A stretch of DNA of 64,000 bases from Ostrea edulis (lineage: Eukaryota). Where the stretch lies: NCBI RefSeq assembly GCF_947568905.1, contig NC_079166.1, forward strand, positions 48,174,001 through 48,238,000. Reading direction: 5' to 3'. The stretch's first letter is position 1; each line of letters starts with the position of its first letter. A program made the position numbers and the translations under genes. Positions 24,701 through 64,000 of this stretch are shown in pieces. A model generated the notes under the pieces. It saw only the letters and a program-made list of their open reading frames with translations, searched no databases and was not told the origin of the DNA.

Positions 24701-27700
24701 TGAGCTATCAGCTATCTATAATTTGCATTTTATTTTCCAGGTTTGCCTGAATGATGGAGTGGAGGTTTGGTTACAGAGACTAAAAGATTCTGTAGCAAAG
24801 ACATTGAGGGAACTGAACATCAGCATCATCCAGGATTGTAACAATGGAGTCATGATGGATGAATGGGCAGCCAAGGTTGGTGAAGGGGCATATTTTGAAT
24901 TAGAGCAGGCAAACATCAAAAGCATTTGTAAAATTATCAAATTTTTTGAGCATGTTGAGACTGCTAAACCAGATAATAACCGATCTGGAGTGATCTCCCT
25001 TCTGAGTACTACATAATTTCTGCTCCCTTATGTACAATGTACTAGCAACACAGCAGGGTCACTAGGAAGGTTTGACTGAGTTGAATTTTTCTGTCTTGTC
25101 AGTACCCAGCACAAGTTTGCAGAATTGGAATGCTATATTATTGGACTAAGGAATGTGACCAGGGTATTGGTGAACTCAAGTACGACCGCAAGGCACTACA
25201 GCATGTATGTACACTCATATTTCTGTCTTACTGTAAGTTACACAGATTGGCCCACTGTAAGTTACATGTTAAATTGGTGCCAGATAGGGAAATTTTCTTG
25301 GAACAGATCAAATTAGTTGCATTTTCAGCCAAAAAATACCTATGTTTTTGATGATGATACTTTCTGGAATAAACTTGTATTGAACAAAAATGTAGCATCA
25401 ATCCATGAATATATACCAATATCTGTTTGAACTATTTATAGAACACTCTGAAAAAGTACCAAGCATCCACAGCCAAATTGACCACTGTCCTAACAAAAGG
25501 AGCCTGGCGGACATTGGAGGAGCCCATGTTACCGCTCCACAAGGCCAGGCTGGAGTCCATGATTGCTGTAAGTTTAACAAAATCTTTCACTCAAATTTTC
25601 AAGAAATTTGAAATGTTAACTTTATGGTAAGCGTAAACAAAGAAGTGAAGGCTGCTGGAATGACATGGGCTGAGCTAAAGAGGATCGCCCGGAACCGTGT
25701 ATGTTGGAAGAATGTGGTTGCGGCCCTATGTTCCCCAGGGAACCCAGAGGATTAAGTCGATCAAGTCAACTTTATGGTACAATGATTTAAGGACGTGTGT
25801 TCTAGACAGATATTCCTTATCTTGGGACTGACTATTGTCCTGGTGCAACACTGGATAGATAATCTAATAGATGCTGCAGAACTATGTACTACCCAGTCAG
25901 TGTTATGTTATTTTGTTCTCAGTATTCAAAAATGTGGAAAGACTGACATTATTTGAGGTGAACATGTAAATTTCAATCACACCATGGTTGACTCTGTAGC
26001 ATTGAATGCCTTAGAGCAAAAGTATCTATTGTAGAATCATTCATTTTTGTGGGAATTGCAAATTTTCGAGGTTTGGAAGAATACAATTTTGTAGGGACGT
26101 GATTTTGTGTCAGCAGTTTTGATTATGTTTATTGTACTTCCGTTTTCCTTGTTCATGGAAGATTTGAATTTGTGGGTCTATCCATACCATAACATTAAAA
26201 TTAAATTCACCACAAAAATCAGTGGTCTTTCAGTAAGTCTGAACAGACAGTAATTTTAGATAGTGGTTTTGCATCTAAAAATGCCAATTTGTTTGGTAAG
26301 AAATTAAACATGTGCTAATATACCTCTCCCTCTTTCAGCAATCCCTCTATCTGAGAGATGTTTTAGAGAACATGTGCAGTAGAAAATCTTTGAGGGAAAC
26401 AACAGATTTTGAATGGAGGAGATGCATTCGTTGTTACTTCCACCCAGTTGGTAAGGTTTTCAAATTCCCACTTTCAAATGCGTTATCTGAAATATGTATC
26501 AACAAAGTTAATATAGTTTTGAGTCAATCTTATGAAAAATTCTTTTGAAATTGAACAGGTTTATACAGCCTTATATGCTGTCGAAATTACTAAAAGCTGT
26601 TTTGATTTATTTTTCAAAAATCTAAATTAAAATTTGAGCCAGGAAGCTATTGTGTCAGGCATTTTGTACAACTGTTCATGCTTATTAAAGAAATTAGCTA
26701 ACAGAGTGTGTGACATTTATAGTTTGTATAAAAATTAGTTTGATTTTTCATATGTTTGATTAGCTAATGATGAGACTTTTGAAAATGAGTCCATTGATAT
26801 TAAAACTGAGGCCAGTGTCAGCGACCTTTCCATACGTAAGCAGGAGTACCAGGGTGAAAACGGTGTTGGGCTGTCATATTTATTTCTTAGCTTCTAAATT
26901 TCACCAAGTTTTTTTGTTCCTTTAGTTTTTAAAGTGCATTTTGATTTTTTTCTTTTCTTCAGCTGCATAGTAATCCTTTTATTTATCTTAAAGTCATATT
27001 TTCTTCAAGTATTATTCAATTATTAATAATTATATCTCAAAATTTAAAAGTAAGTTTTTAAATTATATGTATCTTCCTTTTCAATAATACATGTACTTAT
27101 AAATTTCTCACATACTAGTAAACACTCACTTTTATTATAAATCATTTCTGCTCATAGTTTTTGTTAAATCTAAGAATGCAATAATTTTTCATTATTGAAA
27201 CTTAGCAAAATGTATTTGGAATATTTAGTAAGTTTGGTCTTTTTCTTTTCCTGTAACCTCATTCAGGAGGCTTGATATTTTTACAGTGCTACAAGATGAT
27301 TTCTAAAAAACTTAGTTCTAATGTGCAAGTTTGATGTGCTGCATTACAGATACATTGCAAAGCAAAAGTTTTCTAAACTTTAAGGAAAATATGTCTTATA
27401 ATCCTACAGCTTCTCCGGGAAAGCAAAACTCGCGCATGAGTTTGAGTGGTAAAAGTTTTGTGTTCATTGCCTGTAACATTTTGTGGCTAAATTAGACAAT
27501 TCCCAAAGATCAAAAATGTGACACCTGATTGTAATTTTACCTTCATTCACCTTCCGTGGACACCAGCGCATGTAATGTAATTTCTCATATACCCAACACT
27601 GACCATTCTTCTTAAAACTTTTTATTCCAGTGAACTTTTCATTAATATTAATTACAGACAAGTCTATTATCAGCTGTGTGTGTTTGAGTGTGTGGGATTA

Positions 27701-30700
27701 TCATTTTTTCTGTATTTTTATTTATTGGCATCACTGATATTTGGGTTGCTTTGAAGGAGATTGGTTTTGTGTTGCTTTGTAGTTTACAGGACAGCGTACT
27801 TAACATCTAACAGTCACCACAACTGTTACATAATACATCTGATGTATTAAACTCTACATTTAACAGTCACCGCAACTGTTACAGAATACATCTGATGTAT
27901 TAAACTCTACATTTAACAGTCACCACAACTGTTACAGAATACATCTGATGTATTAAACTCTACATTTAACAGTCACCACAACTGTTACAGAATACATCTG
28001 ATGTATTAAACTCTACATTTAACAGTCACCACAACTGTTACAGAATTCATCTGATGTATTAAACTCTACATTTAACAGTCACCACAACTGTTACAGAATT
28101 CATCTGATGTATTAAACTCTACATTTAACAGTCACCGCAACTGTTACAGAATACATCTGATGTATTAAACTCTACATTTAACAGTCACCACAACTGTTAC
28201 AGAATACATCTGATGTATTAAACGTTACATTTAACAGTCACCACAACTGTTACAGAATTCATCTGATGTATTAAACTCTACATTTAACAGTCACCGCAAC
28301 TGTTACAGAATACATCTGATGTATTAAACTCTACATTTAACAGTCACCACAACTGTTACAGAATTCATCTGATGTATTAAACTCTACATTTAACAGTCAC
28401 CACAACTGTTACAGAATTCATCTGATGTATTAAACGTTACATTTAACAGTCACCACAACTGTTACAGAATACATCTGATGTATTAAACGTTACATTTAAC
28501 AGTCACCGCAACTGTTACAGAATTCATCTGATGTATTAAACGTTACATTTAACAGTCACCGCAACTGTTACAGAATTCATCTGATATATTAAACTCTACA
28601 TTTAACAGTCACCACAACTGTTACAGAATACATCTGATGTATTAAACTCTACATTTAACAGTCACCACAACTGTTACAGAATACATCTGATGTATTAAAC
28701 TCTACATTTAACAGTCACCACAACTGTTACAGAATACATCTGATGTATTAAACTCTACATTTAACAGTCACCACAACTGTTACAGAATACATCTGATGTA
28801 TTAAACTCTACATTTAACAGTCACCACAACTGTTACAGAATACATCTGATATATTAAACTCTACATTTAACAGTCACCACAACTGTTACAGAATACATCT
28901 GATATATTAAACTCTACATTTAACAGTCACCACAACTGTTACAGAATACATCTGATGTATTAAACTCTACATTTAACAGTCACCACAACTGTTACATAAT
29001 ACATCTGATGTATTAAACTCTACATTTAACAGTCACCGCAACTGTTACAGAATACATCTGATGTATTAAACTCTACATTTAACAGTCACCACAACTGTTA
29101 CAGAATACATCTGATGTATTAAACTCTACATTTAACAGTCACCACAACTGTTACAGAATACATCTGATGTATTAAACTCTACATTTAACAGTCACCACAA
29201 CTGTTACAGAATACATCTGATGTATTAAACTCTACATTTAACAGTCACCGCAACTGTTACAGAATACATCTGATGTATTAAACTCTACATTTAACAGTCA
29301 CCACAACTGTTACAGAATACATCTGATGTATTAAACTCTACATTTAACAGTCACCACAACTGTTACAGAATACATCTGATGTATTAAACTCTACATTTAA
29401 CAGTCACCACAACTGTTACAGAATTCATCTGATGTATTAAACTCTACATTTAACAGTCACCGCAACTGTTACAGAATTCATCTGATGTATTAAACTCTAC
29501 ATTTAACAGTCACCACAACTGTTACAGAATACATCTGATGTATTAAACTCTACATTTAACAGTCACCACAACTGTTACAGAATACATCTGATATATTAAA
29601 CTCTACATTTAACAGTCACCACAACTGTTACAGAATTCATCTGATGTATTAAACTCTACATTTAACAGTCACCACAACTGTTACAGAATACATCTGGGGC
29701 TAATGTATTAAACTCAAATTTCACTGTCACAGAAATTGTGACATGGCCTTGACCTATTTCTAAAGAAAAATTAAAAGTCCAAATACTGGGGGGGGGGGGG
29801 GGGGGGGGGATCAGTTTATGAAATCAGACTCTTCACTCCTATCTTAACGGTTGTAACAAGTCCTTCAGGATTAAAGAAATATTTAAATAACTTGTTAACA
29901 TCATATCTTGTCTTTCTGACATCAATGTTTGGTTCATGAGCCAAAACCTACCTCACAAGGCAAGGAATTCTGACTGTCGGATGTCAATTATGCTCCACTT
30001 TTGTTTTGCTGAATTAGCTCTTTTGCAAGATATTCACACCCTTGAGAGACTATGAATGCATAGGTTGAAATATAACATTTGTGGACTTCTAATAGTCTTG
30101 CTCAATTATTCTCCACCCCAACCCCCTATATTAACCAATCATTCAATGATCTCCTTGTACATTTATGCTACAATAGCTATGTTTAATATTTAGTAACAGA
30201 CTTTGCTTTCATTGTTTACACAATTTTGATAATATTACATGTATTGTGAGTTTATAGTAAAAGCTTTTGTTTAATAATTTAATATTTTCCGCTTTTTAAC
30301 TCGTGTCAGAAAATTAACAATAAATGCAGATTTTGCTCTTTGATAAAACATTCATGAATTATCTGTGTACAACTATAATTTTCCTTTGCAGAAGATAAAC
30401 AAGAACCTCTAATATGGATACTCGACACACCTTATTTCTATGGCAACGAATTCTATGGAACAAATGCAGGCGTGGCCTTGACCCCGGTCACTGAACGATG
30501 TTTCTTGACCATGTCTCAGGCACTGAACAACTATCAAGGCAGCTGTGTATCAGGTCCTGTTGGTGTGGGCAAGACAGAGACTGTCAAAGGGCTGGCCAAT
30601 GTGCTGGGACACTACATTGGAACATTCCAGTGCTCCACTGAGTCAGACACTAGTGCCATGGGCAAGATTGTTCAGGGAACTGCCATGGTAATTAAGTGAA

Positions 30701-33700
30701 TTTTCTATGGATTGACTATGAGGTGTTTTGATGATTTATTGTGTTAAGTGTACAATCTGCTGGTTTATTTTGAATAATGAGTCACCATATCAAAGATATG
30801 CAGGAAACTTTGTACATCCAAACATGCTGTACAGTTTTATTTGGATTTCTGAATACTATGTACAGAGGTAAAACCAGGTGGTTTTGAAGTGTTTATTATT
30901 GCTTACTAAACGTTTGACTCTCATCTTGCTTTTTGTTTAGGATGGCTGTTGGTGCTGTTTTGATGAGGTCCAGAGTTTGAACAAACAAGCGATGTCCGTC
31001 CTACTGGACCAGATGACTGCTGTCATTATGGCCCTGAAGGCCAGACAGCCGTACGCCACACTCAGTGATGGACAGGAGGTATGCTACTGTAACTAACTAT
31101 CCTTACTGGGAAAGACTTTATACTCAGCTTGAAGAATTCAGTGAATGTCAACACTGAATAATGTACCTGTACATTCACTCAATGTGATGCATTGCAGGGC
31201 ACATAACTCTTTAAAAACTGATTTATACACAAGTAGTGACACTTAATTGTGATTGAGTCATAAACTTCAATATGGTCATTATTCAAATGCATTGAAAAAA
31301 ATCCCCCAAAAAATCTTCAGTTATATGTACTATTTGAACTCAAATTTGAGATCTAGAATGTTTCTGTTTTAAGATCTCCATCAAGAGAACTTCTGCTGTC
31401 CACATGACCTATAACAAGGAAACGGCCCCTCCTGGCTGTAGCCTGCCAATCGATGTCAGATCTCTGTTTAGAATGGTATCCCTTGTCAAACCAGACTTCA
31501 GCCTCATTCTGAAGGCAAAGTGTGCCGCCATGGGATTCAGAGCACCGAGTGTACTAGGGGCCCGTCTCAAAACTCTGACAGAGCTGGCCAAGGATGAATT
31601 GTGAGTTTTATTCATATTTTCTCCTGTTCATTTTGAATTAACAAATGAGGTTAACAAATGAGGGGATGTGTGTAGTACAGGGAAATGTCAGATGATAGAG
31701 ACGGAAAAAAGACAGGAGGTGACACGTGTTGGAAGGGAGGGTAATGGAATTAGTATTAGGTAATCAATTGTTGGATGATATTAATACATGTGTACATATT
31801 TCCTCTTTATCCATGGTTATAAGAAATCCATAGAATTTTATACCAGAAATGTAAGGGATAAATGGTAGAATTGCATTCAAAGCTGCAGAATTTTGTACCC
31901 ATCGACTGAACAGAAAAATAAATCCATGGACTTTTACCCTGTGAAAAAAATTACAACTGCAGAAGTTAGAATTAATCACCACCACCACAGCCATATAGAT
32001 AGCAAAAGGAGTGGTGAAGCCGAACCACCATTAAACAACCTGAAACGTGAAGGTGATGAGAAATACATACAGACATATTTTCTTTGAATCAGGCCACCAG
32101 AGTGTCATCACCACTTCAGTGTGGCCACACTTGTTGGAGTTCTGAACAGAGCCACACAGAAAAGAAAGTTCATTAGGGACGAGAGATCAGTGGATCGACT
32201 TGAGGCCAAAGACAGGGAAACTTCACGATCAGACAGCCAGGCCTCAGAGGCCCCATCAAAAATAGTCAATCCGCAGCAGAGTGTTGCAGGTAGGCTGATG
32301 CATAGCTTAAGTGGAGAATGTTTGGCCTTTACCTGATACATGTAAAATATCTGAGAGTAATGAACATATAATTTGAAAAGTGTTAAATTTGAAAATCATC
32401 GATGAATGTTTTATATACTTTTAGCTATAGATCTATGAAAGCTTTTTTTAAACTTAGATGCCTGTATGCTAATTCTAAGCGGCATCATTTCATTTATTCC
32501 CTCCTTCTAATTGAAAATCTCAGAAAAAACTCTTCAAACACTGTTTTTATATAAAATTATTTGTGATTAGCACTGGATTTAATAGGACTGTTGCACAAAC
32601 AGTTGCATGCATTGCTTACATTTTCAAAAATGTAGGTCCGAAAATTCTCCCCAAGTTCCATCATTGCCAATTTACCACTCGCAGACAATCGAATGGTGAG
32701 AGAAATAGCCTCAAACTGTTTCTGTATAGTTATTGAAATGTTTCTGTTCAAGCATGTTAGCCAAAACTGGTTTTTGTTGCTGTTTTTGATTTAAAGGAAA
32801 ATTTTGGACATGAATGCATGTAGAGTTTATTCTTTGTCAACTGTTCAAAGATCGTAAACTCTGCACAAACTTACAGAAGTTGGTAACCCAAATTTCTGAA
32901 GTTTTGAGTTTTCCATCTTGAGTGAATTATGTTAAACTTTGAAGTGTTACTGGCACAAACTCATTGAATGTCTTCTACTTTTCTGATTACCACAGTCCAA
33001 CAATACTTTGCCTCTCTTAATGGTAAGCGATAGAATAGTTCAGTGGAAGCTGCTAGTATATGTGTTTAATGTTGTCTAATCTAGAATGGCAGGGCTTTCC
33101 TTGGTTTCTATGAATAAAGGACAGCATCTAAAACTTATAGTATCTGGATTTTTGAATTGATTAATTTGAAGATGATCTAATCATGTTGCCTGTCATGTAT
33201 CATATCCCACGCAATTATTTTTGATTTTTCACATTCATTTATTTTTAGTTTCAGTAATCATTTTTCACCACTAAAAGTTTTTTTTAATTGTCTTCTTTAG
33301 ATATTTGAGTTTAAAGGATGCATTTGACTTTTGTTTTGATTTATGTAGCACTGCATATATTATTAGAAACTAGTTGGTTGTTACAATTTTCTTTCATATG
33401 CAGTATATTGTGACATTACCAGATCTCATAAACACTGTTCATTTGTTGTTCATGCAAGATTTATAAATAATTATTACTATGATTTTGGAATATTCACCTT
33501 CAATTTTCTATCTTTTTTTAAAAAAAATTTGTGGATGCATAATGGCATTTATCAACAATTGTCTCCGATAAATGCTTTTAATTACTGGGCAGGTGCGGTA
33601 ACACTTTCAGCCTTGTTAACCTTGAGCATTTTTAAGACCATGAATACTAAGCGCATTGTATGACCGTTTCAAACCTAGAATGAACCTGATTTCTTCTTTT

Positions 33701-36700
33701 TTTTTCCCATAAATAATTTCCCAATTTTTTTTTTATTAAAGGGGGAGGGGTTACGGTACATGTGCTGTATTTAGATGTTCCTGTGTATTAGAAACTATCT
33801 TTGTAAATAGAATTTGTGTTTTTATTTCATGTGATGTATATTAAATGTCTGCATGTCCAAATTAGAGGTTGTAATGTAAATCAAATATATTCTTGAATAT
33901 TCAAATGTAGTCATGAATATTCAAATTGCAGTTCCAAATATAGTAATATCTGAGGAACCAGACTCCAGTGAAATGCATGTTCATTTCCCCCGTAGAGGGA
34001 CCATCCATGGTATATAAACATTCCCTCTGAAAAAGATTAATTAATATCAAAATAGTAGTTTATACTTATTAAATGTTGTTGCACAATATATATAGTCTTT
34101 TTAACAACCTGGACTCTCGATTCCTTTAAAAAAAGAGCATTGACCATTTAATTACATGTATATCTTATAATGCTTAATCTTTATATCTGTGCAGTATATT
34201 TTAAAGGGAAAAATATCTTAATGTTTCAAATATGTATATGACATTTTCCATAGAATTTAGTGCTGCTTATTCAAAATAACTTGTAAATTTAAAATATGAA
34301 AATTTGATGCTGGTTCTGTTAATGCTAAGCAAGTATATATACTAAGGCAATTTGATAAAGTTTCATCTCTGAACTCATTGTCATTATCTTTCTCATGCTG
34401 AAGAAAGGCTTCTTGACAAAACTAATCTAGGTTGAGACTTTGGGACTCTGAAATCTGACATAACAAACTGGGAGTCTAACACTCAGTGAGCTTTCATTTG
34501 GTAAACTCCTGGAGTGGTGATGGGTAGATTGAATGGAAGATAGAATTGCTTTGATATTTTTCCTTTAGTTTGCTTTGATATAATGTCATTGTATATACAA
34601 TTGAAATCAAGTCAATACCATCTTGCATTTGAATAATATTTACTCCATATTTCTAAATTGTGCAGTATTTACCAAATGTGTGTCATTTTAATGTTTCATT
34701 GGAATTTTTCAGTGGCAACCAGTGGTATGAAAATGACCACAGGTATTGGTGTTAATCGTAAATCTGGTACACCTAACCCACTGACTGTAGCAGGTAAACT
34801 AGAGCATGCTCTGGTGGCACAGACAATAAAAGAAATAGTCGGACCGAGATTTACTGACCAGGTAACTTCTTTTAGTCATGAATGTGTGACTATAAAAAAA
34901 ATCTAAAAGATATAAAAAATAAGAAAAAATTATTAAACCATTTTATGTACTTTTTATAACATTTCTCGTCCAGTTGAAGATATGATTAACATCCTGTATT
35001 TAGCCAAAGTTCTTCAAATTCTCTCTTTCTCATTATTAACATGGCAAATCTATGACTTATCTACTTTCACTTTCATTTTGTAGAACATGAAGATATTTAA
35101 GCACATACTTGATGATGTGTTTGCTGGGCTACCTGACCCTCCAGTGGTCCATCAGATCCCCTCGGCTAGAACCCGTGGCTTCGATGTGGAACTGGTCCTC
35201 AAACAGAAGTGTATAGATAAAGGTCTTATGTCTCATGAACCATGGATAGAGCGGTGTAAACAGCTGTACAACATTTCCAAAGTACATCATGGTAAGACCT
35301 GCAACATACAAGCAAACTGTGAACAAGTTTGGTATAGTTGTTTGATTTTTTCTTCGTGTTCTGCTGATAATTAAGTACTATACATTTAGATGTATGTTTG
35401 AATCAGATGCATCTCATCATTGCATAATGACTTTATCTATACTTCAAATTTACTAAATCAAATCCTAATCTGAAGAATGAGAACATGAGGAAATCTGTTG
35501 AAGTGCAGTTTAGAAATTCTGCTTACGGTGTACTAAGCACTTTATTGACCTGACTGTGACGATCTGTTGTGTTCACTAGGAGTGATAGTGGCTGGCCCCC
35601 CAGGCAGTGGCAAGAGCAGCTGTATCCAGACTCTGGTCGATGCCCTCAGTCTGTCCAATCAGGCGGGAGCATCAAGACAATCTCAGACTAGCAGGACCAC
35701 AGGAAACATACAGGAGAACCAGCACAAACTCATCAAAATCAACCCTATGGTGGTCGACGACTGTCAACTTATGTTTGGTTACCTCAATGTAAACAATGAC
35801 TGGGTAGATGGGATTTTCACCTCAGCCTGTAGAAAGGCAAACAGGGTAAAAGAAAATATTTAACACCATCATTGATTTATATGCACGTGTACGAGAATAT
35901 TTAACACCATCATTGATTTATATGTACATGTACCAGGTATTTAGTTGTTAACAGTACTAAGAGATAGGATCTGGCAGTAAAATCTCTAGCTGCATTTATT
36001 TATCTGTTCATAGAACCAGAGCACGACATGGCTTTGTTTGGATGGACCATTAAACCCGGGATGGGCTGACAACTTCAACCCTATTCTCAATGGTGATAAG
36101 GTAGTAGCAGTTTATTACTTCTACAATGTGTAAACAAAATATAAAATTTAATTAGATGAATTCATAGGTATTTGAAATATCTTAAAATCTTTTGTATACT
36201 TATCATTATTGTGTGTGTGAATGGGGGGGTTGGGGGGTTGGACAGGGTAAAGGGTGGTGGGAGAGGGGAAAGAGAGGAGGGAGAGGAGAAGGAAGAAAGG
36301 GGGAAGAGGGAGTGAAGGGGAAGGAGGGGGGGGGGGAGAGAAGAAGTGAAAGGGGAAGGAGGAAGGGAGATAAGAGGGAAGGAGGAAGGGAGATAAGAGG
36401 AAAGGGGAAGGAGGATGGGAGATAAGAGGAAAGGGGAAGGAGGAAGGGAGATAAGAGGAAAGGGGAAGGAGGGAGGGAGAGAAGAGGAAAGGGAAGGGGA
36501 AGAAGAGGAAAGGAAGAGAATGGGAAAGAGAAGAAGAAAGGAGGAGGATGGAGAGAAAAGAAAAGGAGAAGAAGGGAGAGGGAGAAAGGGCAGGAAATGG
36601 AGCTGGGGGAGGAAAGTGCAAGGGAAAGGAGCAAGAGGAGAGGAAAGGGAAGGAGGGAGAGGTGGGAGGGGGTGGATCAGGAGAAGGGGGTGGGGGAGAA

Positions 36701-39700
36701 AGGGATAGGGAGATATCAAGAATCAACCCACCCCCCCATTTATTCTCCCATATTCCTTATTTTTTCTCCCTGTTCCCCATTCACTTCCATGCTTTATCCC
36801 CCCCCCCATTTATTCTCCCATATTCCTGTTTTTATTACCCTTCTCCCCATTCTCCTCCATGCTTTATTTCCTGTGTCTCTGTTGTAGGTCCTACACCTGA
36901 AGAATGGAGACAAAATGTTCCTGTCAGACAACATCATTGTCATTTTTGAGACAGACAACCTAATCAATGCCTCACCTGCCTCAGTCTCTAGATCAGTAGG
37001 TCTTCATATTTGTAAATGAGATTTGGATTGTAAACCAACTTATTTTTTTCATATCATAATTCAGGAGTCATTGTTTAAATACCCTTCAATGGAATGCAAA
37101 TACATACATATTGTGGCTGTATGAGCCTACATTTACAACAGAATGATTCGTTTGAGTAAAAATATTCACAGAAGCAGTTACAAATATCGAGGAGATTTCT
37201 TGCACCTGTTGGTTGTAGAATTTATTGGAAAGTTTGAAATGTTCACACCAATTTCCTAATGCTATGCATGTTTAATAATAACAGTGTATAATGATGAAAG
37301 CACCCCAGAAAATTTAACGGAGACAATATGAATGACCATATTATCCTTAAAAAGTTAAGGGCAGTACATTTGACTGCAGTACTCCTAGAAAGTGGTTAGA
37401 ATTGAGTTGATGCTAGTTGTAATTTATTGTACCTCTACTGATTTTTTTCTATATAAAAGTAATACATTACAACTGTCTATTTCCCTAAAAATGCACTATT
37501 TCTCTGGCTGATGAGTACTCCCTGCAAAATCAGTGCTACTTCCTGGGACTACTCCCTCATTGGCATTTATTTTTAACCAATCAAATGCTTGGTAGACAAA
37601 GTGTCCCAGAAATTGCGAGATATGTGATGTACTTTTTTAGCAAATGTCATAAGATCAATTGGAGAGATGTCTGAAATTAGGTTTGAGAAAAATAATGAAT
37701 TAAAATTGTTTTCGTATGATAAAACAGTTATAGAATGGGTATTTCAGGACATGGTAAATCTATGGTCCCCCTCGAGAAATAGCTTTCTTGTCCTGGGAGA
37801 CTGTAAATTTCCTGTTTCCTTATACCCACTCTGTAACTGCATACTATCCGTGTTACAGTTTACTGATCGTTGTGAAAAACTGTCTTTCATTGAAATTCCG
37901 TACACAATGTTATATAGATTTTACATGAACTACATAATGATTTCTCCTGATGCTGTAGGGTATTGTGTACATTGACAAAGATGTTCTGGGCTGGAAACCA
38001 ATAGCTGATGCTTGGCTGGAAAGCAGGTCCCCTCAAGAAATACATGTAAGTTTCCAATTATCATGGTCCCCCCTAGCAAATCAAAAATCATTTTTAATGA
38101 TAACAATTTCTATGTAGAATATAAAACATTTCATGTACTTTGTGCCCTTTGATTATAAATTGCTGACTCCAATATTCATATATTTTAATGATTCTGTTAG
38201 ATACATGTAGTTCTATGTGTTAAAATGAAGAAAAAAATCCTTTCCTCATTTAATGGAAATTGTTAGACACCCCCCTATGTTTACACTAATAACATGTACA
38301 TACTGTTACCTAATGCCACTCTGTGTTTTTCCATTGCTCTATAGGAGCAGGTAAGATGTGTGTATGTCACTGTTTTCTGTGTTTCTAGTGGTGTCACATT
38401 GTGTCAGATTAAATTGCAAGGCCATCTGAAAAAAAATGGTTCCTCTCAACTTATGTGAAGGGGCTCATAATCAGATTACTTAAACAGTTTGTCATAAAAC
38501 CATAGTGATTATTTATGATTTCATGAAAAGTAAATTAGAAAGTGATTCATTCTGATTATTATTTTTATACTTAGATTTACATAATTTTCTGTCATTCATA
38601 TATTAGGAATCGATCATTTTAGTGAGAGGAACCAAATTATTTTGGCCTACCACTTTGTAATTGCCAATAACATCTCGCGAAATGGATTGATTACTAACTC
38701 AATAAAAGAAAGAGGTTTATTGACTGATCAACATTTTCCTTCAGAATGTTCCACATCACAAATTTACCAGGGTAAGACCAACCAGCAGTGATGTCATGTC
38801 TATATATAGATCAGGGTATCTCTCCAAATATGGCTGTCAGTATCTAACTCCCTGGTTGGCGGTCTCTGTCTATGATAAATCTATTTTTTATCCCTGGGAT
38901 GGTTCTTTTAAGTCTAAAACAGCATTTCAGATGATGTATAAGTAAATCATGAGGGGAAAAAAATTTCATACTTTTGCAATTTATCTTTTTAAACTTTGCT
39001 TGGATATTTAACAATTTCTTTTAATAATTGCTTATATGCATTTAAAAAAAAAATTGCAATAATTGTTAACAAAATGTTTTTTAATCATTGAATACATTTA
39101 TTGTATTTTGATTATGAATCATTGGTTAGTACTCAGTACTTTGGAATAAGAAATTATAAGTGGAAAGTGAAGTGTTTGTGTTTCAAATTATTTCAACAAT
39201 GAATAAGTAAAATCTACCTCAAACAATCAGGTACTAGAATATTTACCTTATCCTAGTCAATCCGCACAAAGTTAATACTATTATAGAATATGTAATCCAA
39301 AGGACAGCTAGTATGCAAACTAAAGTGATTGTAGTAGATGTAACCTGCTAAATGCTGTAGAGAGACTTACAGGCTAATTGAAATTTAACCAAGTTTATAT
39401 GCAAAATAATTTGTAACTGGCAAGAAATGTTGATTTGTAACTGTTGTTGTCTAGGACGAGTTGGCTCACCAGTTACTGATCACAGTGAGTGGTGTTGGGT
39501 GTTCACTCTTTAGTTCCTCTTTTGGATCTGGTTGACTTTATTCAATTATGCATCATACCTTTCAATTGCCAAATTTTTGTTTAAATCAACAAATAGTTTT
39601 GACCAGATAGTCAGAAGTTCAATGTGACATAAGAGTTAATTCAATTTTTGTTGGGAAGCAGATAAACACACTAGGTGTAGAGAACAGGACTTGATGCATC

Positions 39701-42700
39701 ATTGATATTTTATTGTAAACTTCAATCATTATATTTGTCTTGTAGAATAAAATAAATGTATGTAGATCAGATTAGGTGTCTGCCAGTAGAACTGACACAA
39801 AATGTCAAGTCATGCTGTAGATTTCATCTGATGTACTTCCTGTTACCAATCCTGTTTTCAATTGCTAGTTCAGTTTTTTGTTCCAAGTGTGTGTTGAATG
39901 TAATTTTTCTTTATTTCACTTGCATTACTTTGACAGTATCAGAAAAAGCCTGATGCAGGCGATACTCTTGATCCCGAACCAATCAGAACGGTGGAAGGGG
40001 TAAAGCTACAGATATTGGGGTTGGAGGGTGGTTCTGTTATGTGTGTGGCAGAGTCCAACTTTCGCACCGTGTTTTGTAGTAAATCTTGCATTATTGATGT
40101 GGTTTGAAGTGAGGACAAGTGAGATGAAAATTGTGTATAAAAAGTAATGAATTGATGAGTAAGGTAATGGGATTTTAAGGTCTAATGTTGAGAAAAGCAT
40201 TGGGAGGATGTGACTGTGTTTTGGGGTGGGGAGGTTTATTCTGAGATTAGCACTTACAAATTGTGTTATGCTGTGGAATCATTGAAATTTCTGGGAGCCA
40301 ATTTTTGTGGAATACCAAGATTTTCCAGTTTCATTGGGATACAATTCAGAGGATATGATTTCTGTCTATTGAAACATCACATAAAGTTTTATTTTGTTAG
40401 CCTCGAAGTCCACAAATATTGAACCTCCTGAAAATTATTGATTCCACATTAGTTAGTGCACTATGCAATGTGTAGATTAGAGTGGTAAGCACAAGGCAAA
40501 GAAATCTATTTTAACGACATTTTCCTTTGGAAATATAAAGCTCTCGCATTACATATGCTACATATGCTTAGTGTTGACTCTTTAAGCTCTTTATGATTCA
40601 GTACTTATTTCACTACAGGTGCTTCAACGAGCCTTTGCAAAGACCTTGGATCCAATATCCCAGTTTGTACTCAATGAAGCCAGGTATTCCTTTTATTTAG
40701 ATATACTCAAGTTATATGTTTTTAAACAGAGAATTTCATTTTTCTGTGAAAATACTGTAGATATAGATACTAGTAAATCATTAAAAGATGAACAAAGGTA
40801 AATTAACTGTTGATGGTTTTCGTTGAATGTTGATCTACATCTTTACAGTGTTTTATAAACACAGTAACAACAATTGTTCACAGTAATATTTCACCTCTTA
40901 AGTCACAGTTGCTGCAAAACTGTAAATCTCAGGAAAATATTGGGACAGACCAATATTTTCCTTGAGAGCTATAGTTCTGCAGCTTATGTCTCGGTGGAGT
41001 ATGTACTTTGTATATTTAGAAATTACTAGATGAAAATGATAAAGATTATAACATTGTGCTTCAGACCCCGGCTGTCCCTGTCGCTGGTAGGAATGTTTAA
41101 GACATGTCTGGGACTCCTCAGTTCCATGCTGGCCAACAACAATGAGATTGGAGGCGAGCTCCATATTGAACGTCTGTATCTGTTCTGCCTCATCTGGACG
41201 TTTGGTGGACTGCTGGACAGTGCAGACAGAAAGTCATTTAGTGACATCCTTAAGAACCTCTCTAATGCGTGAGTGCAGATGTTTTTATATATATGTACCT
41301 GTCACTTTGCATGAATACAGATGCATAACTCAGTTGTAATAGATATCTCTAGTGAGTGTAATCCACTTGTACAGATAGAAGTCTGTAACGTATCATTACA
41401 CATCGATTTCTCTTTAGGGCTATTCCAGAAATAAATACATGGGGGGGTCGGGAGGCACCTTTTGTATATACCAAGCACCCATAAAAAAAAAAGAAAAAAT
41501 TACCCCATGACCCATCAAATTAATAAACTCATTTTACAATGACCCATCTAAAAAAAAAAAAACTAACCAGACCCACCACAAAAATATTTTTAAAAATGAA
41601 AACGGTACAAATCTCGCGAGGTTTTTGGGACAAACATTCTAGTCAATGACGCGGTAATGCCTGTGCGACATTGTATCACATTAGTTCTGAAGAAACGATG
41701 TCACATCAACAATCAAAGGCATCTATGGCGGGAATGTTGGAAAGATTGGGAGTCCAAACGATGCTATTATCATGAAATGGGTATGGATATGTTTTTCCAC
41801 GAATCGTTCGTCTTCTAATGGAGCCCGCGCCCGGAGGCCTCTATATCACCATCACACCGACTGATAAATATAACGCATCGGTACCCTCGTATAAATCAAC
41901 TAAGGTTTGCCTATTTTTATTAGAAAACGGAATACCTATTGGTTTCAAAATATTCCCAAAATCGATGCACTGTAAACTGTAATAATCTAAAGAACAGAGT
42001 TTGCCGCCATCACGTCCAAAGGGACCCTACTAAACGCGCCTCTAATTTGAAGAGTGCTGTAATGGAAAGTTATTCGCTGCAAAGAGCGACAACTCGAATA
42101 GTTCTACGTTACTTCCGATTTCCGATTTCGAAAGCAGCATTTCGAAAGCACGTTTTCAATTTTCCCTCCGACGTTTTGTAACCAACACGACTAGAGCGAC
42201 AATAAAAATATTCTGAAAACTCAACACCCATGTGGCACAAAATAAAACAATAGAAACTACCCACTACCCATAATAAATATTTTTTTAACAGTCCAACCAC
42301 GGACCAATTAAGATATGCAAAAATACGACCACCCACACAAAGAAATATCATTTGCCGCCCGACCCCCCCATTTGATCATTTCTGGAACAGCCCTTAGTAA
42401 ATGAGTACTTGTGACTGATCTCACACTCTATAAAGCAGAAGACAAAAACTGTAATCAATTTTTATTTGTGTGAAAGAAATATGAGTCAGATTCACAACAT
42501 CCTTTTCTCTCAGTGTTTGTTTCCACAAACCAATCATTTTTGCACATTCAGAAGTTGCAAGAGTTGGCTCACTCAGAAATTATGTTTGTTGCAAATGTGT
42601 TTCCAAACGGTGATTCACAACTGATAAAATGAATAAAAGTTGATTTACTGGGATTTGAAATACCTTTATTTCTAAAATGTGGGGTCAGATAAGAGATCCG

Positions 42701-45700
42701 ACTCTGCACTCTCATTTGATGAGTCTGATACGTTTTTTTTTGTGTGTGTGAAAAAACGGATAGCATATGGGCAGATAATTCAAGATTATATGAGTAGGAT
42801 TTTAGGATTCTCAATCCAAATAAAAAGCCATTCAAATCAAGGATTTAACAATCCATGCAAACATTTGTCTTTAAAACTTTGAATAAAAACTTAGTTTTTG
42901 ATATGTACATTTGCAGACTGCCAGATGATGATCGAGATATCTGCGTGTTTGATTACTATGTAGATGAATCTGGTGAATGGGATCCATGGACCTCAAAGTG
43001 AGTTATCTCCCTTTGACTGAAAAGGTGAAAATTACACGTTCTAAACATTTGGAAAGAATGACTTAACTTCCAATTTTTATTTAGACTGCCAGAAGCTGTA
43101 TATTCTGACAATCAAGACATGCTGGGGGAAGTCTTTGTGCCATCAGTAGACACAGTGAGTACTGGATCACATTTCATTCTATAAAGCCTGTCAGTTTACA
43201 TTTTGTTTTTGTTGTTGTAATTGCTTCAGTGAATTTGTCTGTCTACAGCTGCAACAATTTTATCAATTGCAATAATTTCCTTCAACAGATAAGAACAAGG
43301 AACTTGATGGAGTTTGCCTCTTTCTCTGGCCTCAATGTTCTGTTAGTGGGGGCCAATGGTTCAGGGAAAACCAAACTCATTGAGGAGTTCATCGATTACA
43401 TGGAAAGACTAGGTATGCATGAACTGATGATAGATACGTAGAATTATTTGTTCATCTTTCCATGGTAACTGTTGAAATGATTAGACAATTTGGAAACCAC
43501 CAGTATAAGGGTGAAAGAATGGAGGCATTGAGAATGAGAAATGCATTGTCTGAAGAAGGGAATAATGATTGTAAAAATAAATATTATTACAAAACTCACA
43601 CTGCTTTGAGAGATGACTAGAGATACTTCTGTGTTTCCAGACCCCCAGGCAGCAGTGTGGAAGAGACTGGTGTTCTCTGGATCCTCCACGGCTAAACAGC
43701 TCCAGTCCTTCTTAGATTCCAACATCTATCACAGACAAGGTCAGTACATACTTAAAGCTGTATGACCCGATGTTCATGTATTATTTTTGTACATAATTAC
43801 TTTAAAACAGATTAATTACTTTATAAAGTTATTAACTTTCCCTTAATTACATGCTTGAAAACATCTGCATGTAAAAGAAAACAGTGCGAATATTATTTAG
43901 TAAGTAAATATAGTGGCTACATATATAAATCATCCCATAATAGACGTCTATAAATAGACCCACGCGCGTCAGGGGAATCCCAACATGATGTATTAACTCA
44001 TACGCAACTGTCTAGTTTTAAGGCTGAAAGAGCGTAAAACAACGAATTACTAAGAGGTATTTGATATTTTTATTTCTATTAAACTTATGGTACGGTACTG
44101 TTATAACAAAATACAGATAAGACCACCGATGATCTGAAAGTTTGAACTGGTCACGTGACTGTCACTTGAAATGGCAGAGTGACGCAGTTATTTGTAAACA
44201 TCGATTTAAAATCAAATTATTTGGGTTAAAACAGGTGAAATAATTTATGATATATCGTACAGTCTCATAACTACATACGTGCGATGATTTAATAGCGTTT
44301 TTACGAGATGGAAAAAAATATTGTAATTCGGACCATACAGCTTTAAGGCAGCCCTGTTTTGTGACAGCTTTAGGTTCCTTGACGATGCATTTGAGGGCAA
44401 TTAGTGTTAAACAATTCTCTACTAAAGACAATGTCAACTGTGACAGTGTTGTTGGATCTTTGAAAAAATACATTTGGTGAATGACTTTGGAATCATTGCA
44501 ATAGCTTATATTATGTTTACATTCCATGTGAAATCGGAGTACACATGATTTCGAGTTTATTTTGCTTTAGGCTTTGTGTATGGTGCCAAAGACAAGAAGA
44601 AGCTGAAGGTGTTCATTGATGATGTGAACCTACCAGTTCCTGATGAGTATGATGTACAGAGGTGCAATGAGGTAACAGTCCAGGAGAAGTAAAAAATTCA
44701 AATCATGGAAATAGAAATCATACCTTTGAAAATACATGATCCGCCCCTGATAATATAAAAAATTTATTACTTTACAGTTGCTTCGCCAGCTTTTGGATGA
44801 CAAGATTTTGTGTAAACTACAGAAGCCATTTGAGATGAAAACGGTGGAGGGAATGAGTATTATCTCTGCCATGTCCATGTCTGAGCAGGCCAATGTCAGC
44901 AGCCGTCAGCTCTCGGACAGGCTACTGGTCAGTCTAACTGCAAGGCATCTGTCATTTTTTGGGGGAGAGACTCATTATACTGAGTGTGGTTGTAACTGTG
45001 TTTTGTATTATTTCAGAGGCATTTTGCAGTCTTCAATCTCTCAACTCCACAAGAAGATGCATTGAAGAGTATTGTTCATGGAATTTTAGATGTAAGACCT
45101 ACAAGAAATTTTCTCAAACTTCTGATATTCATGTAGATACATATATATACCCATTACAGTATACCTTTATTATGCAGATAAGACAGACTTTGTTATTTTG
45201 GTATACTTGTAGTTCTACTCTGCTAATTAAGGTTCTATATGTAAATAGGTGAACATGACAGATGGAGACCGCCCTGGTCTTGACATTGACCTTCACAATG
45301 GACTGGTCAAGGCCTCATGTGAGTTGTTGAAGTCTCTGCAGAATGTACTGCGACCTTCACCAATGCATGGTAGACGACATTATCTCTTCACACTGAAAGA
45401 CATTACAACTTGCTTCCAGGTAAAGTTTAACTTTTAAGTACATAGAAGGGGCTCAGAATGGAAACTGATGAATGATACTGATGTATACAGTTAACTGGTT
45501 ATGTGAGAGGAAAATGAGTATGAAAGTCATGTGATGTATCTTTTTATTGATTTATAGTGTTTGAAACGATTACCAGAGGAAAGCAGGGCAGATGAGACTT
45601 TGATCCCTGTCATATCTCTATGGCGACATGAAATGCATAGAATTATCCGAGATCGCCTGAGTCGAACATCTGACCTGATATGGTTTGACTCTACAATCAA

Positions 45701-48700
45701 GGAAATCATTGAACAGGTAAAACATGAATTATTAGGATTCCACTAAGTGTGTGGATTCAGGCTGATAACATTTCAGTTGGTTTACTGTGAACATTTGTCT
45801 TCTACTTTAACCAAAAAATCACTGCTCATCCATTACAACACCATTGTTATTTATTGTATGGATAAGCATTGTTAATCATATTGGTAGCTAGGTCTCCTAT
45901 TTGATTTTGTGGTATTTTTACAGACATTGTTAATCGTATTGGTAAGGTCTTCTATAACTGTTTGATTTTGTGGTATTTTTATAGACATGGCCAGAACTGA
46001 AGGATCCGCTCCTGGACTATTTTGTGACCTTCCCCACAGATGCTAGACTTTATCAGAGGCCAGTCACTTCTGTCGGTACCAAACATATCAAGGTAAGGAA
46101 ATAGAGTGCTTTATCAGACTTATAGTGCTGATCAATTTTTAAATTAATTTTCACGTTAAACTAATTTGTTTATCATAAGTCTTTGTGAAAGTTTACCCAG
46201 TTCTCACTTTTCAATTCACACCAATCTATATACATTTAATTATGTATTTTCCAATTATTTTTATTGGATAAAAAGAACTGGATAGTACTGGAAGATAATT
46301 TTTGTTCACAGCTTTTTATGTGATATTGGTTTTATTCTTGTATTCCAAATGAAATCTGTTTCCACTCTGTTTTGAAGTCATAGTTTTATTTCATTATTGA
46401 TGCACTTTTGATTTCAAGGATTTATCACTCAATGAAAATAGCATTAATAAACTGCTGTGAAAATAAGTCTTTATGCAGTAATAGTGCTTAGAATTGTATC
46501 ACGTCAATTCCAGTATTGAAGAAATCTCAATAAGATTATGTGGGACTGATTTTATAATAACTTTTACAGGTTGTCCTACAGCCAATTGAGAACCTGAGGG
46601 ATGTACACAGCTGTTTGAGCACTCACCTGACCAGATATAACGAGGAGTTCGGAAATATCCGACTGGATGTTATGCTGTCGGATTTCATCATCTCCCATGT
46701 TATCAGAATGCACCGAGTTCTTAGCTTCCATCATGGGTCAGTAAAGGGGCTAGTTAAAATATCCCATTCCATTATTAAACAATCTTCCCTATATCAGTTC
46801 TTTCCCAAAATATAAGAAATCTTGGTTCATGTTGTTTACAGTGAGAACATGTTGTTGATTGGTTTATGTTGTTTACAGTGGGAACATGTTGTTGATTGGT
46901 TTATGTTGTTTACAGTGGGAACATGCTGTTGATTGGTTTATGTGGTTTATGTTGTTTACAGTGAGAACATGCTGTTGATTGGTTTATGTTGTTTACAGTG
47001 GGAACATGCTGTTGATTGGTTTATGTGGTTTATGTTGTTTACAGTGAGAACATGCTGTTGATTGGTTTATGTTGTTTACAGTGAGAACATGCTGTTTATT
47101 GGTTTATGTTGTTTACAGTGAGAACATGCTGTTGATTGGTTTATGTTGTTTACAGTGAGAACATGCTGTTGATTGGTTTATGTTGTTTACAGTGGGAACA
47201 TGCTGTTGATTGGTTTATGTTGTTTACAGTGGGAACATGCTGTTGATTGGTTTATGTTGTTTACAGTGGGAACATGCTGTTGATTGGTGCAGTGGGCTCC
47301 CACCTGGCCACCCTGTGTAAACTTGCTCTTCATGTAGCAGATGTCCCCATTCACAAAATGGACACCTCCAAGAGGAGCAACTTCTTTGATGGCTTGAGGT
47401 CTGCTGTAAGACTCTGCGGGTCAGAGGGTAAAATCCTGGCTCTTATGTTCACAGTAAGTATGATACTTTTTAGAATTTGTAACACTTCTCAAGCAAATTA
47501 ATTTCTTTGTGTGTTTCATATGTTACGATATGTATCATTTGAACTAAAGATGCCTTATATAATGTGTTGCAGTACACTGTGTTAAGTATAGGTATTCATT
47601 TTCATGAGATATCTTATAAGCATATGAAATCATGATACTTTTTCATCAAAACACAGAAATAATAGTTTTAAGTATGAAACTGAGGTAATGAGCATAAACT
47701 TTTGACAGATCCATGTACAATATTCACTTTTTCGAAAACATTGGAGGGTTACTTCTTATTTGAAGTCTCGGTACTAGTTCTATGATAATTGAATTCATGA
47801 TGAAGGTATCAATTAAAGAATAGGCACAGTCATATATCACACTGATTTTGACTACAGATGACTCTGTTTACCTGATCAAGATTTAGGGCTCACGGTGGGT
47901 GTGACCAGTTGACAAGGGATGCTTACTCCTCCTAGGCACCTGATCCACCTCTGGTATCCAGGTGTCCATGTTTGCCCAACTCTATATTTTGTATTGCTTA
48001 CAGGGGTTATGAGATTGATCACTATGCGTTTTATCCACGCCTTTTATCAAAATGAGTTGGAAGTCCCAACTACATTTTCTTTATGTATTTTAACCTCAAT
48101 ATCTCAAACCCTTGGATATCTCAAAGTTTTCTTTTTGCCCCAATGAGTTTGAGATAATAAGATTCGACTGTATTCTGAAAAGTCCATCATAACTTGATCT
48201 ATTTTATTCCTCCAGGCACGAGACCTTGAGGACCCTGTGTACTTGGACGCCATCAACAGTCTGCTGATTAGTGGCGAGTATCCACACCTGTTTACCAATG
48301 ATGAAATGGAGGGATTACTACTGGTAAAACATTTAACCAAGAGTACAAGTGAACATGGCTTTTAAAAAAATGAATATTATTAATATTTTCTTGTCATGAC
48401 ACACGTACAGGTGTATTCATACATTATAAACCTTTCTGCCCACAGGCCATTGGTCCAGCTATGAAGAGGGAGTTTCCCAGCCTTTCGGTTGATCCAATGA
48501 AATTCTTTGTTGCAAGAGTGAAGAGTAATTTGCATATCTTGATGTGCCTGCAGCCAATGAACAGTCTTCTGAAGTTATCTGCAAGGTATTTATTTTGATT
48601 TTTTTTTTTATTGTACAAAAAAATATGAGTTTTTTGAAAATTCATTGTGCATAAATTCACTTGAATTATACTATCAATTGTCCTTTTTCAGTCAGTATCC

Positions 48701-63766: not shown

Positions 63767-63772
63767 GTAAGT

Positions 63773-63775
<3 letters not shown>

Positions 63776-63815
<40 letters not shown>
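63776..63815. repeat. (TA)n microsatellite just after exon 68 donor
   Basis: Direct reading. Confidence 0.9.
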
Positions 63816-63818
<3 letters not shown>

Positions 63819-64000
63819 TTCTGACCCTAGAAGTGCAACTTCTTTCTTTGTCACTTTAGTCCAGGATGTGAATGCAAAAGATTTCATAAGTCACAAGATA
63901 TATAAAATGTCTCCTTGTGAGGAATTTTTCAAAGGCAAAATCTCTTCAAACAAATATTGTAAAGTCACCAATTCAATTCTTCATACAACACGGCCAGGTG

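What the first reader, a model, noticed from the sequence alone, without database searches (positions are those of the whole stretch)
30392..47453. Intact but catalytically eroded dynein motor: candidate slow, regulatory or structural heavy chain
Compared with canonical DNAH5/8 motifs: AAA1 keeps Walker A (GPVGVGKT), Walker B (CFDE) and the AAA2-donated Arg finger (SVSR). It loses FNR (now VQS), TMNPGYAGR (now TYNKETAPPG) and the sensor-II HYDFGLR (now HHFSVA, Arg absent). AAA3 loses PGGGRN and has NLRD changed to TLKD. The AAA4 P-loop GVGGSGKQS is GAVGSHLAT (no Lys). About 3,920 codons stay in frame over 68 exons, implying selection on a protein with altered or weak ATPase cycling.
Basis: partly seen in the sequence, partly recalled or inferred. 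Interest (0 to 1): 0.75.

Follow-up and report, generated by a model that had tools for sequence, protein, structure and literature searches.

The report
Oyster copy of non-motile dynein DNAHX

Summary
The stretch 30392-47453 runs from the acceptor of one exon to the donor of another and holds 27 exons (about 1,214 codons).

The whole gene has 101 exons and encodes 5,484 aa. It runs from about 2.9 kb before the window to about 23 kb beyond it. It is fully open, with 99 GT-AG introns and one GC-AG intron. The window holds 78 exons, not 68.

The protein is not a canonical DNAH5/8. It is the orthologue of sea-urchin DNAHX (XP_041462850; Chai et al. 2025 preprint, PMC11785096):
- Two trees give a 100% SH-aLRT split.
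- It has the same Walker-A Thr-to-Val change, and has lost the sensor-I loop and the sensor-II Arg.
- It has the same AAA4 small-domain insertion and stalk/microtubule-binding-domain insertions.
- Its length exceeds 5,000 aa.

Three canonical DNAH5/8-class loci lie elsewhere in this genome.

Spliced contigs confirm eight junctions (seven between adjacent model exons) across AAA1 and into AAA2. All 10 exonic differences fall on third codon positions, and 9 are synonymous.

Two small additions: the AAA4 P-loop Gly-Lys is lost in all 90 DNAHX-like proteins examined, and the subfamily also occurs in internal fertilisers and bdelloid rotifers.

The parts
1..64000 (+). Part of the DNAHX gene: exons 4-81 of a 101-exon model, encoding residues 238-4354 of 5,484. 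The gene starts about 2,860 bases before the window and ends about 22,940 bases after it.
   Evidence: tblastn chains with the annelid protein P0161 and the Crassostrea angulata protein P0199, junction refinement, and an open 16,455-base CDS
30392..47453 (+). The finding's stretch: 27 exons, 3,641 coding bases, residues 2321-3534, from AAA1 to the AAA4 P-loop
   Evidence: Exon list. Spliced contigs confirm the junctions 26835/30392, 31078/31374, 31600/32093, 34861/35084, 35291/35580, 35845/36014 and about 36100/36888.
30553..30576 (+). AAA1 Walker A GPVGVGKT: Lys kept, canonical Thr replaced by Val, as in sea-urchin DNAHX V2221
30953..30976 (+). AAA1 Walker B CCFDE kept; the following conserved Asn-Arg replaced by Gln-Ser
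31407..31436 (+). AAA1 sensor-I loop TYNKETAPPG: Asn kept; Pro, Tyr and Gly-Arg of MNPGYAGR lost
32106..32129 (+). AAA1 sensor-II helix HHHFSVAT: the Arg of HYDFGLR is Ala
35594..35617 (+). AAA2 Walker A GPPGSGKS, intact
36981..36992 (+). AAA2 Arg finger SVSR that points into the AAA1 site, kept
43349..43372 (+). AAA3 Walker A GANGSGKT, with canonical Gly-Lys-Thr. Canonical DNAH5/8 have Ala-Lys-Thr here.
44877..44909 (+). AAA3 segment that replaces the canonical PGGGRN
47286..47312 (+). Degenerate AAA4 P-loop GAVGSHLAT: Gly-Lys replaced by His-Leu, which is the most common state across the subfamily
49200..50415 (+). [quoted passage not shown] It corresponds to the DNAHX pre-sensor-II insert.
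   Evidence: Alignment. The AlphaFold2 model of the C. angulata orthologue shows a beta-hairpin followed by a helix.
51035..62230 (+). Stalk and microtubule-binding-domain exons carrying insertions shared with DNAHX. The inserted segments start at 51035, 51089, 51758, 51842, 55269 and 55821.
   Evidence: The precomputed Pfam lists of the DNAHX-like relatives lack PF12777, which the canonical proteins have.

Best explanation
The stretch encodes AAA1 to the start of AAA4 of the oyster orthologue of DNAHX. DNAHX is an animal-specific sister subfamily of the outer-arm DNAH5/DNAH8 (Chlamydomonas gamma) heavy chains.

Shown here:
- The gene is a complete, expressed, selectively constrained 101-exon gene of 5,484 codons.
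- It groups with the sea-urchin type member and not with canonical DNAH5/8.
- It carries the subfamily's diagnostic changes.

Inferred from the sea-urchin cryo-EM work:
- AAA1 still binds ATP, since the Walker A Lys, the Walker B Asp-Glu and the AAA2 Arg finger are kept.
- AAA1 hydrolyses ATP or releases phosphate poorly, since the Walker A Thr is Val, the sensor-I gate residues are lost and the sensor-II Arg is lost.
- The AAA4 small-domain insert holds the C-terminal cap, so the motor stays in the pre-powerstroke shape.
- The stalk and microtubule-binding insertions weaken microtubule binding.
- The protein therefore acts as a non-motile partner or scaffold (dynein-X) for other axonemal heavy chains, not as a force generator.
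For: Closest relatives:
- The best solved-structure matches are outer-arm gamma, DNAH5 and DNAH8.
- The closest full-length relatives are proteins of more than 5,000 aa from amphibians, basal fishes, a sponge and an annelid.
- The word search recovers the Lytechinus variegatus 5,272-aa protein P0196. Its residues V2221, S2322, T2324 and K2393 match the numbering in the preprint.
- There is a sharp gap between DNAHX-like hits (544 bits or more) and canonical DNAH5/8 (436 bits or less).

Trees:
- Two trees on separate column sets (linker; AAA2 to AAA4) both give a 100% SH-aLRT split of DNAHX-like against canonical plus protist gamma.
- Inside the DNAHX clade the order broadly follows the species tree.

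Shared characters:
- Shared motif changes.
- Shared insertions.
- Length of 5,484 aa.

Paralogy:
- Three canonical DNAH5/8-class loci lie elsewhere in the genome. They are 74-97% identical (most pieces; down to 57%) to a canonical mollusc protein, against 42% for this locus.

Expression and constraint:
- Spliced contigs are present.
- 10 of 10 exonic differences are at codon position 3, and 9 are synonymous.
- AAA1 is among the least conserved domains in DNAHX (42-49% between oyster and deuterostomes) but the most conserved in canonical DNAH5 (88-89%).
Against: - No biochemical or structural data exist for any mollusc member.
- The oyster protein keeps the Walker A Lys, the Walker B Asp-Glu, the sensor-I Asn and the Arg finger, so slow hydrolysis cannot be excluded from sequence.
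- The non-motile model rests on one preprint and one species.
- The AlphaFold2 confidence in the AAA4 insert is only 47-71, and that model is of the C. angulata orthologue, not of this exact protein.
- The runs with spliced contigs are only guessed to be RNA, and their tissue is unknown.
Confidence: 0.85

Rival explanations
1. A slow but still active motor. AAA1 hydrolyses ATP at a reduced rate and the protein produces force or tension in the axoneme, for example as a brake or a slow arm.
For: The Walker A Lys, Walker B Asp-Glu, sensor-I Asn and AAA2 Arg finger are all kept in the oyster. The Walker A Lys is kept in 90 of 90 subfamily members. That argues for a selected nucleotide-dependent function.
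Against: The sensor-II Arg is replaced (Ala in this protein; Arg kept in only 5 of 87 subfamily members) and the Asn-Arg after Walker B is lost in all members tallied. The sensor-I gate Tyr and Pro are lost. AAA1 is among the least conserved domains. The stalk and microtubule-binding domain carry variable insertions. The sea-urchin member showed only ATP-bound, pre-powerstroke particles.
Confidence: 0.12
2. A decaying duplicate (pseudogene) of DNAH5/8 whose frame is open by luck.
For: The catalytic motifs are degenerate, and motor identity to canonical DNAH5 is low at 19-34%.
Against: - The open frame is 16,455 bases over 101 exons with consensus splice sites.
- Spliced transcripts exist.
- All differences are at third codon positions.
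- Orthologues run from sponge to frog with a species-like tree.
- The degenerate AAA4 P-loop is itself conserved, with His-Leu in 73 of 90.
Confidence: 0.01
3. The ordinary DNAH5 or DNAH8 orthologue of this oyster, or a member of the DNHD1 orphan class.
For: Automatic annotation names relatives 'DNAH5-like' or 'DNAH8-like'. DNHD1 is also reported to have a poor AAA1 site.
Against: Three separate canonical DNAH5/8-class loci exist in the same genome. Trees separate this gene from canonical DNAH5/8 at 100%. All nearest relatives are gamma-class or DNAHX, and the preprint reports no sequence kinship between DNHD1 and DNAHX. No DNHD1 sequence was put in my trees.
Confidence: 0.02

Closest known systems
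DNAHX, sea-urchin type member XP_041462850 (Chai et al. 2025, bioRxiv, PMC11785096)
   Same: - Same clade in both trees.
- Length above 5,000 aa.
- Walker A Thr to Val.
- Walker B kept.
- Sensor-I Pro and Tyr lost.
- Sensor-II Arg lost.
- Insertions at the same alignment columns in the tail, after AAA1, in the AAA4 small domain, in the stalk and in the microtubule-binding domain.
- Coexists with canonical DNAH5/8.
   Different: - Oyster sensor-II position is Ala where the urchin has Lys.
- The oyster keeps the sensor-I Asn, as the urchin does (TVNSET).
- The ambulacrarian-specific extra segment after the sensor-II helix is absent.
- The oyster gene has lineage-specific micro-exons.
- No structure or biochemistry exists for the oyster protein.
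Crassostrea angulata LOC128183562 isoform X10 (P0199, 5,495 aa, 'uncharacterized protein')
   Same: 92.9% identical over the whole length, colinear exon by exon, with the same motifs.
   Different: It comes from another oyster species, and it is a predicted protein with no functional name.
Canonical outer-arm heavy chains DNAH5/DNAH8 (Chlamydomonas gamma)
   Same: The nearest canonical class. Same domain order. The linker is 32% identical, and Pfam's DHC_N1, DHC_N2 and AAA_6 are recognised; AAA_7 and AAA_8 match below Pfam's curated cut-offs.
   Different: - The canonical chains have GPAGTGKT, FDEFNR, MNPGYAGR, HYDFGLR, PGGGRN and GVGGSGKQS, nearly invariant.
- They are about 4,600 aa long.
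- They lack the AAA4 small-domain insert.
- Their stalk is intact (PF12777 present).
DNHD1 (orphan heavy chain needed for sperm flagella in mammals)
   Same: It is also reported to have a degenerate AAA1 site and many insertions, so it may be a functional analogue.
   Different: The preprint reports no close sequence kinship and insertions at other sites. It was not tested directly here.

Membership tests
DNAHX subfamily | Forms one clade with the type member XP_041462850, apart from DNAH5/DNAH8 | tested here: met
   P0196 was identified as the type member by length, organism and four residue numbers. The split has 100% SH-aLRT support in two trees built on different columns.
DNAHX subfamily | Unusually long heavy chain, above about 5,000 aa, because of scattered insertions | tested here: met
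   The model is 5,484 aa. Most insertions of 12 aa or more are shared with Lytechinus and with most of the 22 DNAHX rows.
DNAHX subfamily | AAA1 Walker A Thr replaced (Val in the type member), with Lys and Walker B kept | tested here: met
   GPVGVGKT and CCFDE. Across the subfamily, Val occurs in 50 of 90 and Lys in 90 of 90.
DNAHX subfamily | Sensor-I loop without the conserved Pro and gate Tyr | tested here: met
   TYNKETAPPG against TMNPGYAGR.
DNAHX subfamily | Sensor-II Arg replaced | tested here: met
   Ala in HHHFSVAT. Arg is kept in only 5 of 87 subfamily members, against 24 of 24 canonical proteins.
DNAHX subfamily | Folded insert (beta-hairpin plus helix) before sensor II in the AAA4 small domain | tested here: met
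   An insertion of about 50 aa lies at the same columns as in Lytechinus and is absent from canonical chains. The AlphaFold2 model of the 92.9%-identical C. angulata orthologue gives two long strands followed by a helix, at pLDDT 47-71.
DNAHX subfamily | Insertions in stalk coiled coils and in the microtubule-binding domain | tested here: met
   Inserted segments encoded from window 51035, 51089, 51758, 51842, 55269 and 55821 are shared with 13-22 of the 22 DNAHX rows.
DNAHX subfamily | ATP trapped in AAA1, only the pre-powerstroke state, no motility | not testable with these tools
   Needs purified protein and cryo-EM or ATPase and gliding assays. Known only for the sea urchin.
DNAHX subfamily | Pairs with a second heavy chain (dynein-X) and can form a phi particle | not tested
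   The partner is unidentified even in the sea urchin, so no complex prediction was attempted.
Canonical DNAH5/DNAH8 (outer-arm gamma class) | Groups with DNAH5/8 orthologues and keeps the invariant AAA1 and AAA4 nucleotide motifs | tested here: not met
   It is separated at 100% support. The motifs are lost. Canonical copies sit at three other loci.
DNHD1 | Closest sequence kinship to DNHD1 proteins | not tested
   No DNHD1 sequence was fetched. All nearest relatives found were gamma-class or DNAHX.

The most novel reading that the evidence does not exclude
DNAHX may have a rewired set of nucleotide sites across the whole ring, not only a dead AAA1.
- The AAA4 P-loop Gly-Lys is gone in all 90 members examined and is replaced by a conserved His-Leu.
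- AAA3 carries a textbook Gly-Lys-Thr that canonical DNAH5/8 lack.
- The text of the preprint that I read and searched for Walker/AAA3 mentions (its figures are not held) discusses neither point.

The subfamily is also present in internal fertilisers and in male-less bdelloid rotifers. Its role would then extend beyond free-spawned sperm, for example to somatic cilia such as oyster gill cilia.
Probability: 0.4. Interest if true: 0.45.

Novelty: new member of a known kind. Interest (0 to 1): 0.3.

Why it matters
It gives a checked gene model and motif map for a bivalve member of a recently described non-motile dynein subfamily. It shows that the degenerate sites are themselves conserved. Oysters offer abundant sperm and gill cilia and could be a second experimental system.

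It also cautions annotators. These genes are widely labelled 'DNAH5-like' or 'DNAH8-like', although they are a separate and probably inactive class.

Tried and rejected
- Bacterial-style ORF listing was useless, because the exons are short and a purine-rich minisatellite gives the longest ORFs.
- Gapped tblastn ran across short in-frame introns. I switched to ungapped hits, chaining and splice-site refinement.
- Three first-pass exons were wrong and were corrected against the C. angulata protein: 32093-32293 with 34666-34861, 18907-18996 and 6673-6723.
- The alignments and trees used the first-pass model. Its roughly 38 spurious residues sit in columns that the tree filters dropped, and none touches a quoted motif. 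Residue numbers printed in those calls are 30-38 higher than in the final model.
- Fetching the C. angulata genomic locus for a proper dN/dS failed, because the protein exceeds the tool's 5,000-residue limit.
- No DNAHX chain is in the copy of the Protein Data Bank searched.
- A findings search for 'DNAHX' found nothing.
- The pseudogene, canonical-orthologue and DNHD1 readings were considered and rejected, as set out under the rival explanations.
Full report
**What is in the window.** The window has 35% G+C and no N. Its + strand carries many short open segments that translate to dynein heavy chain sequence. Pfam assigns them in order to DHC_N1, DHC_N2 and AAA_6 (the AAA1 site); the AAA_7 (AAA3) and AAA_8 (AAA4) matches fall just below Pfam's curated cut-offs (19.7 vs 25.8 bits; 24.9 vs 25.6 bits). 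The window is G000:C3:48174001-48238000 of an 895-Mb assembly.

**Gene model.**
- I fetched 30 kb upstream and 40 kb downstream.
- I chained ungapped tblastn hits of a close relative, Crassostrea angulata LOC128183562 isoform X10 (P0199, 5,495 aa), and refined every junction against splice sites.
- I then corrected three first-pass errors.
- The final model has 101 exons, a 16,455-base CDS and 5,484 residues. It starts with ATG and has a single terminal stop.
- All acceptors are AG and all donors are GT, except one GC donor outside the window.
- The model is 92.9% identical to P0199.
- The window holds 78 exons (12,349 coding bases, residues 238-4354).
- The finding's coordinates are exactly an acceptor (30392) and a donor (47453). 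They enclose 27 exons and residues 2321-3534.

**The observation.**
- AAA1 keeps the Walker A Lys, the Walker B Asp-Glu and the AAA2-donated Arg finger.
- AAA1 has Val for the Walker A Thr and Gln-Ser for the Asn-Arg after Walker B.
- The sensor-I loop lacks the Pro, the Tyr and the Gly-Arg.
- The sensor-II Arg is Ala.
- AAA3 lacks PGGGRN.
- The AAA4 P-loop has His-Leu for Gly-Lys.

**What it is.**
- Solved-structure searches with the linker exon and the AAA1 exon put the outer-arm gamma, DNAH5 and DNAH8 class first. Scores were 113-119 bits against 67 or less for the other dynein classes in the linker, at only about 45% identity.
- A full-library search with the linker exon returned, as the nearest full-length proteins, unusually long heavy chains. 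These came from a caecilian, frogs, reedfish, a calcareous sponge and, through its cluster, the annelid Dimorphilus.
- A literature search found the preprint by Chai et al. (2025, PMC11785096). It describes DNAHX, a non-motile subfamily that branched from the outer-arm alpha (DNAH5/8) chain in early animals.
- The word search with the annelid protein recovered the Lytechinus variegatus 5,272-aa protein P0196. It also recovered dozens of mollusc, annelid, nemertean, echinoderm, hemichordate, chordate, cnidarian and placozoan proteins at 544-1,001 bits. Canonical DNAH5/8 scored 436 bits or less.
- P0196 has Val at 2221, Ser at 2322, Thr at 2324 and Lys at 2393, exactly as numbered in the preprint. 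It is therefore the type member.

**Trees.**
- I aligned 40 full-length proteins and built two maximum-likelihood trees on non-overlapping parts. One used the linker, which leaves out the AAA1 motif columns. The other used AAA2 to AAA4.
- Both give a 100% SH-aLRT split. The window's protein, the type member and all other long proteins fall on one side. Canonical DNAH5/8 and protist gamma chains fall on the other.
- Within the DNAHX side the order is oyster, scallop, mussel, limpet, other lophotrochozoans, then deuterostomes, cnidarians, placozoan and sponge.
- These are quick searches, and some rows are long (sponge, rotifer, octopods, acoel). The window's own neighbourhood is short-branched.

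**Paralogy.** The same genome holds three canonical DNAH5/8-class loci, at C1:77.39 Mb, C3:64.30 Mb and C2:18.27-18.29 Mb. Their AAA1 exons are mostly 74-97% identical (lowest pieces 57-63%) to a canonical abalone protein. The window's locus is 42% identical to it. A search with the window's own AAA1 exon found no second DNAHX-like copy.

**Subfamily characters.**
- Insertions relative to canonical chains fall in the tail, before and after AAA1, in AAA2, in the AAA4 small domain, in both stalk helices, in the microtubule-binding domain, and in AAA6 and the C-terminal region. Nearly all are at the same columns as in Lytechinus and in 13-22 of the 22 other DNAHX rows.
- The AAA4 small-domain insert is about 50 aa, with conserved LPWAG and NLPYSK motifs, and is encoded at 49200-50415. 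It is absent from every canonical row.
- An AlphaFold2 model of the C. angulata AAA4 domain (mean pLDDT 81) places a long beta-hairpin followed by a helix there. This matches the preprint's description, though local confidence is only 47-71.
- A tally of 90 DNAHX-like and 27 canonical proteins gave the following:

| Feature | DNAHX-like | Canonical |
|---|---|---|
| AAA1 Walker A Lys kept | 90/90 | not tallied |
| AAA1 Walker A Thr replaced | 78/90 (Val in 50) | 1/27 |
| Asn-Arg after Walker B kept | none | 26/27 |
| Sensor-II Arg kept | 5/87 | 24/24 |
| AAA4 Gly-Lys kept | 0/90 (His-Leu in 73) | 27/27 |
| AAA3 Gly-Lys-Thr | 82/91 | 2/27 (Ala-Lys-Thr in 23) |

- The AAA3 and AAA4 points are not in the text of the preprint that I read or found by term search (its figures are not held).

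**Is it functional?**
- Two runs of a close relative hold spliced contigs. These reproduce eight junctions from 26835/30392 to about 36100/36888; seven join adjacent model exons (39-43 and 45-49) and the 31600/32093 junction is one of them, leaving 32289/32996 and 33022/34713 around the 27-nt micro-exon unconfirmed. The AAA1 exons are therefore transcribed and spliced.
- All ten exonic differences seen in the four runs lie at third codon positions, and nine are synonymous. The one replacement gives the residue found in C. angulata. Twelve further differences are intronic.
- Between oyster and deuterostome DNAHX, the linker (60-61%), AAA2 (57%) and AAA4 (53-61%) are the best conserved domains, and AAA1 (42-49%) is among the worst. 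In canonical DNAH5, AAA1 is the best conserved (88-89%).
- This is the pattern expected if catalysis is no longer selected but the shape of the ring is.

**Mechanism.**
- Shown here: orthology, integrity, expression, constraint, and the presence of each diagnostic sequence feature.
- Inferred from the sea-urchin structures: ATP is bound but not turned over at AAA1. The AAA4 insert clamps the C-terminal cap, so the motor stays in the pre-powerstroke state. The stalk insertions prevent normal microtubule binding. The chain pairs with another heavy chain as dynein-X and can adopt the phi shape, perhaps to carry inner-arm dyneins on intraflagellar transport trains.
- A slow-motor alternative cannot be excluded from sequence, because the oyster keeps the minimal hydrolysis residues.

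**Verdict.** The class was described in January 2025, and relatives are already predicted in public oyster annotations, so this is a new member of a known kind.

Noticed in passing
window 36101-36887: This intron holds a purine-rich minisatellite with a 29-base period, followed by a pyrimidine-rich duplicated 70-mer. It produces the longest 'ORFs' of the region on both strands, and none of them is coding.
   Followed up: partly
window 33540-33693: Short intronic element present at several-fold higher depth than its flanks in two DNA runs (about 590 against 95). Many contigs end there, so it is a dispersed repeat.
   Followed up: no
window 60406-61491: A tandem array that stays open in all three + frames, inside the 6.3-kb intron between 55838 and 62192.
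   Followed up: no
window 6697-6723, 18973-18996, 32996-33022, 38745-38771, 53689-53733: Micro-exons of 24-45 bases that match residues of C. angulata isoform X10. Only the sequence match supports them here, and they may be alternative cassettes.
   Followed up: partly
proteins (P0188, P0178-P0180, P0009, P0212-P0215, P0239, P0243, P0245): DNAHX-like proteins occur in a land snail, pulmonate snails, a caecilian, salamanders, a direct-developing frog and bdelloid rotifers. To my knowledge these fertilise internally or, for the rotifers, lack males. That does not fit the preprint's link to external fertilisation.
   Followed up: partly
P0247 and P0070 (Octopus, Argonauta): The octopod DNAHX-like proteins sit on a very long branch (1.0-1.6 changes per column) and have also lost the AAA1 Walker B Asp-Glu. 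They have gone further in erosion than the oyster.
   Followed up: no
G000 C1:77.39 Mb, C3:64.30 Mb, C2:18.27-18.29 Mb (L017-L028): This genome has three canonical DNAH5/8-class loci, one of them on the same chromosome 16 Mb from the window.
   Followed up: partly
window 43349-43372 and relatives: The AAA3 Walker A is a textbook Gly-Lys-Thr in 82 of 91 DNAHX-like proteins. Canonical DNAH5/8 carry Ala-Lys-Thr in 23 of 27.
   Followed up: partly
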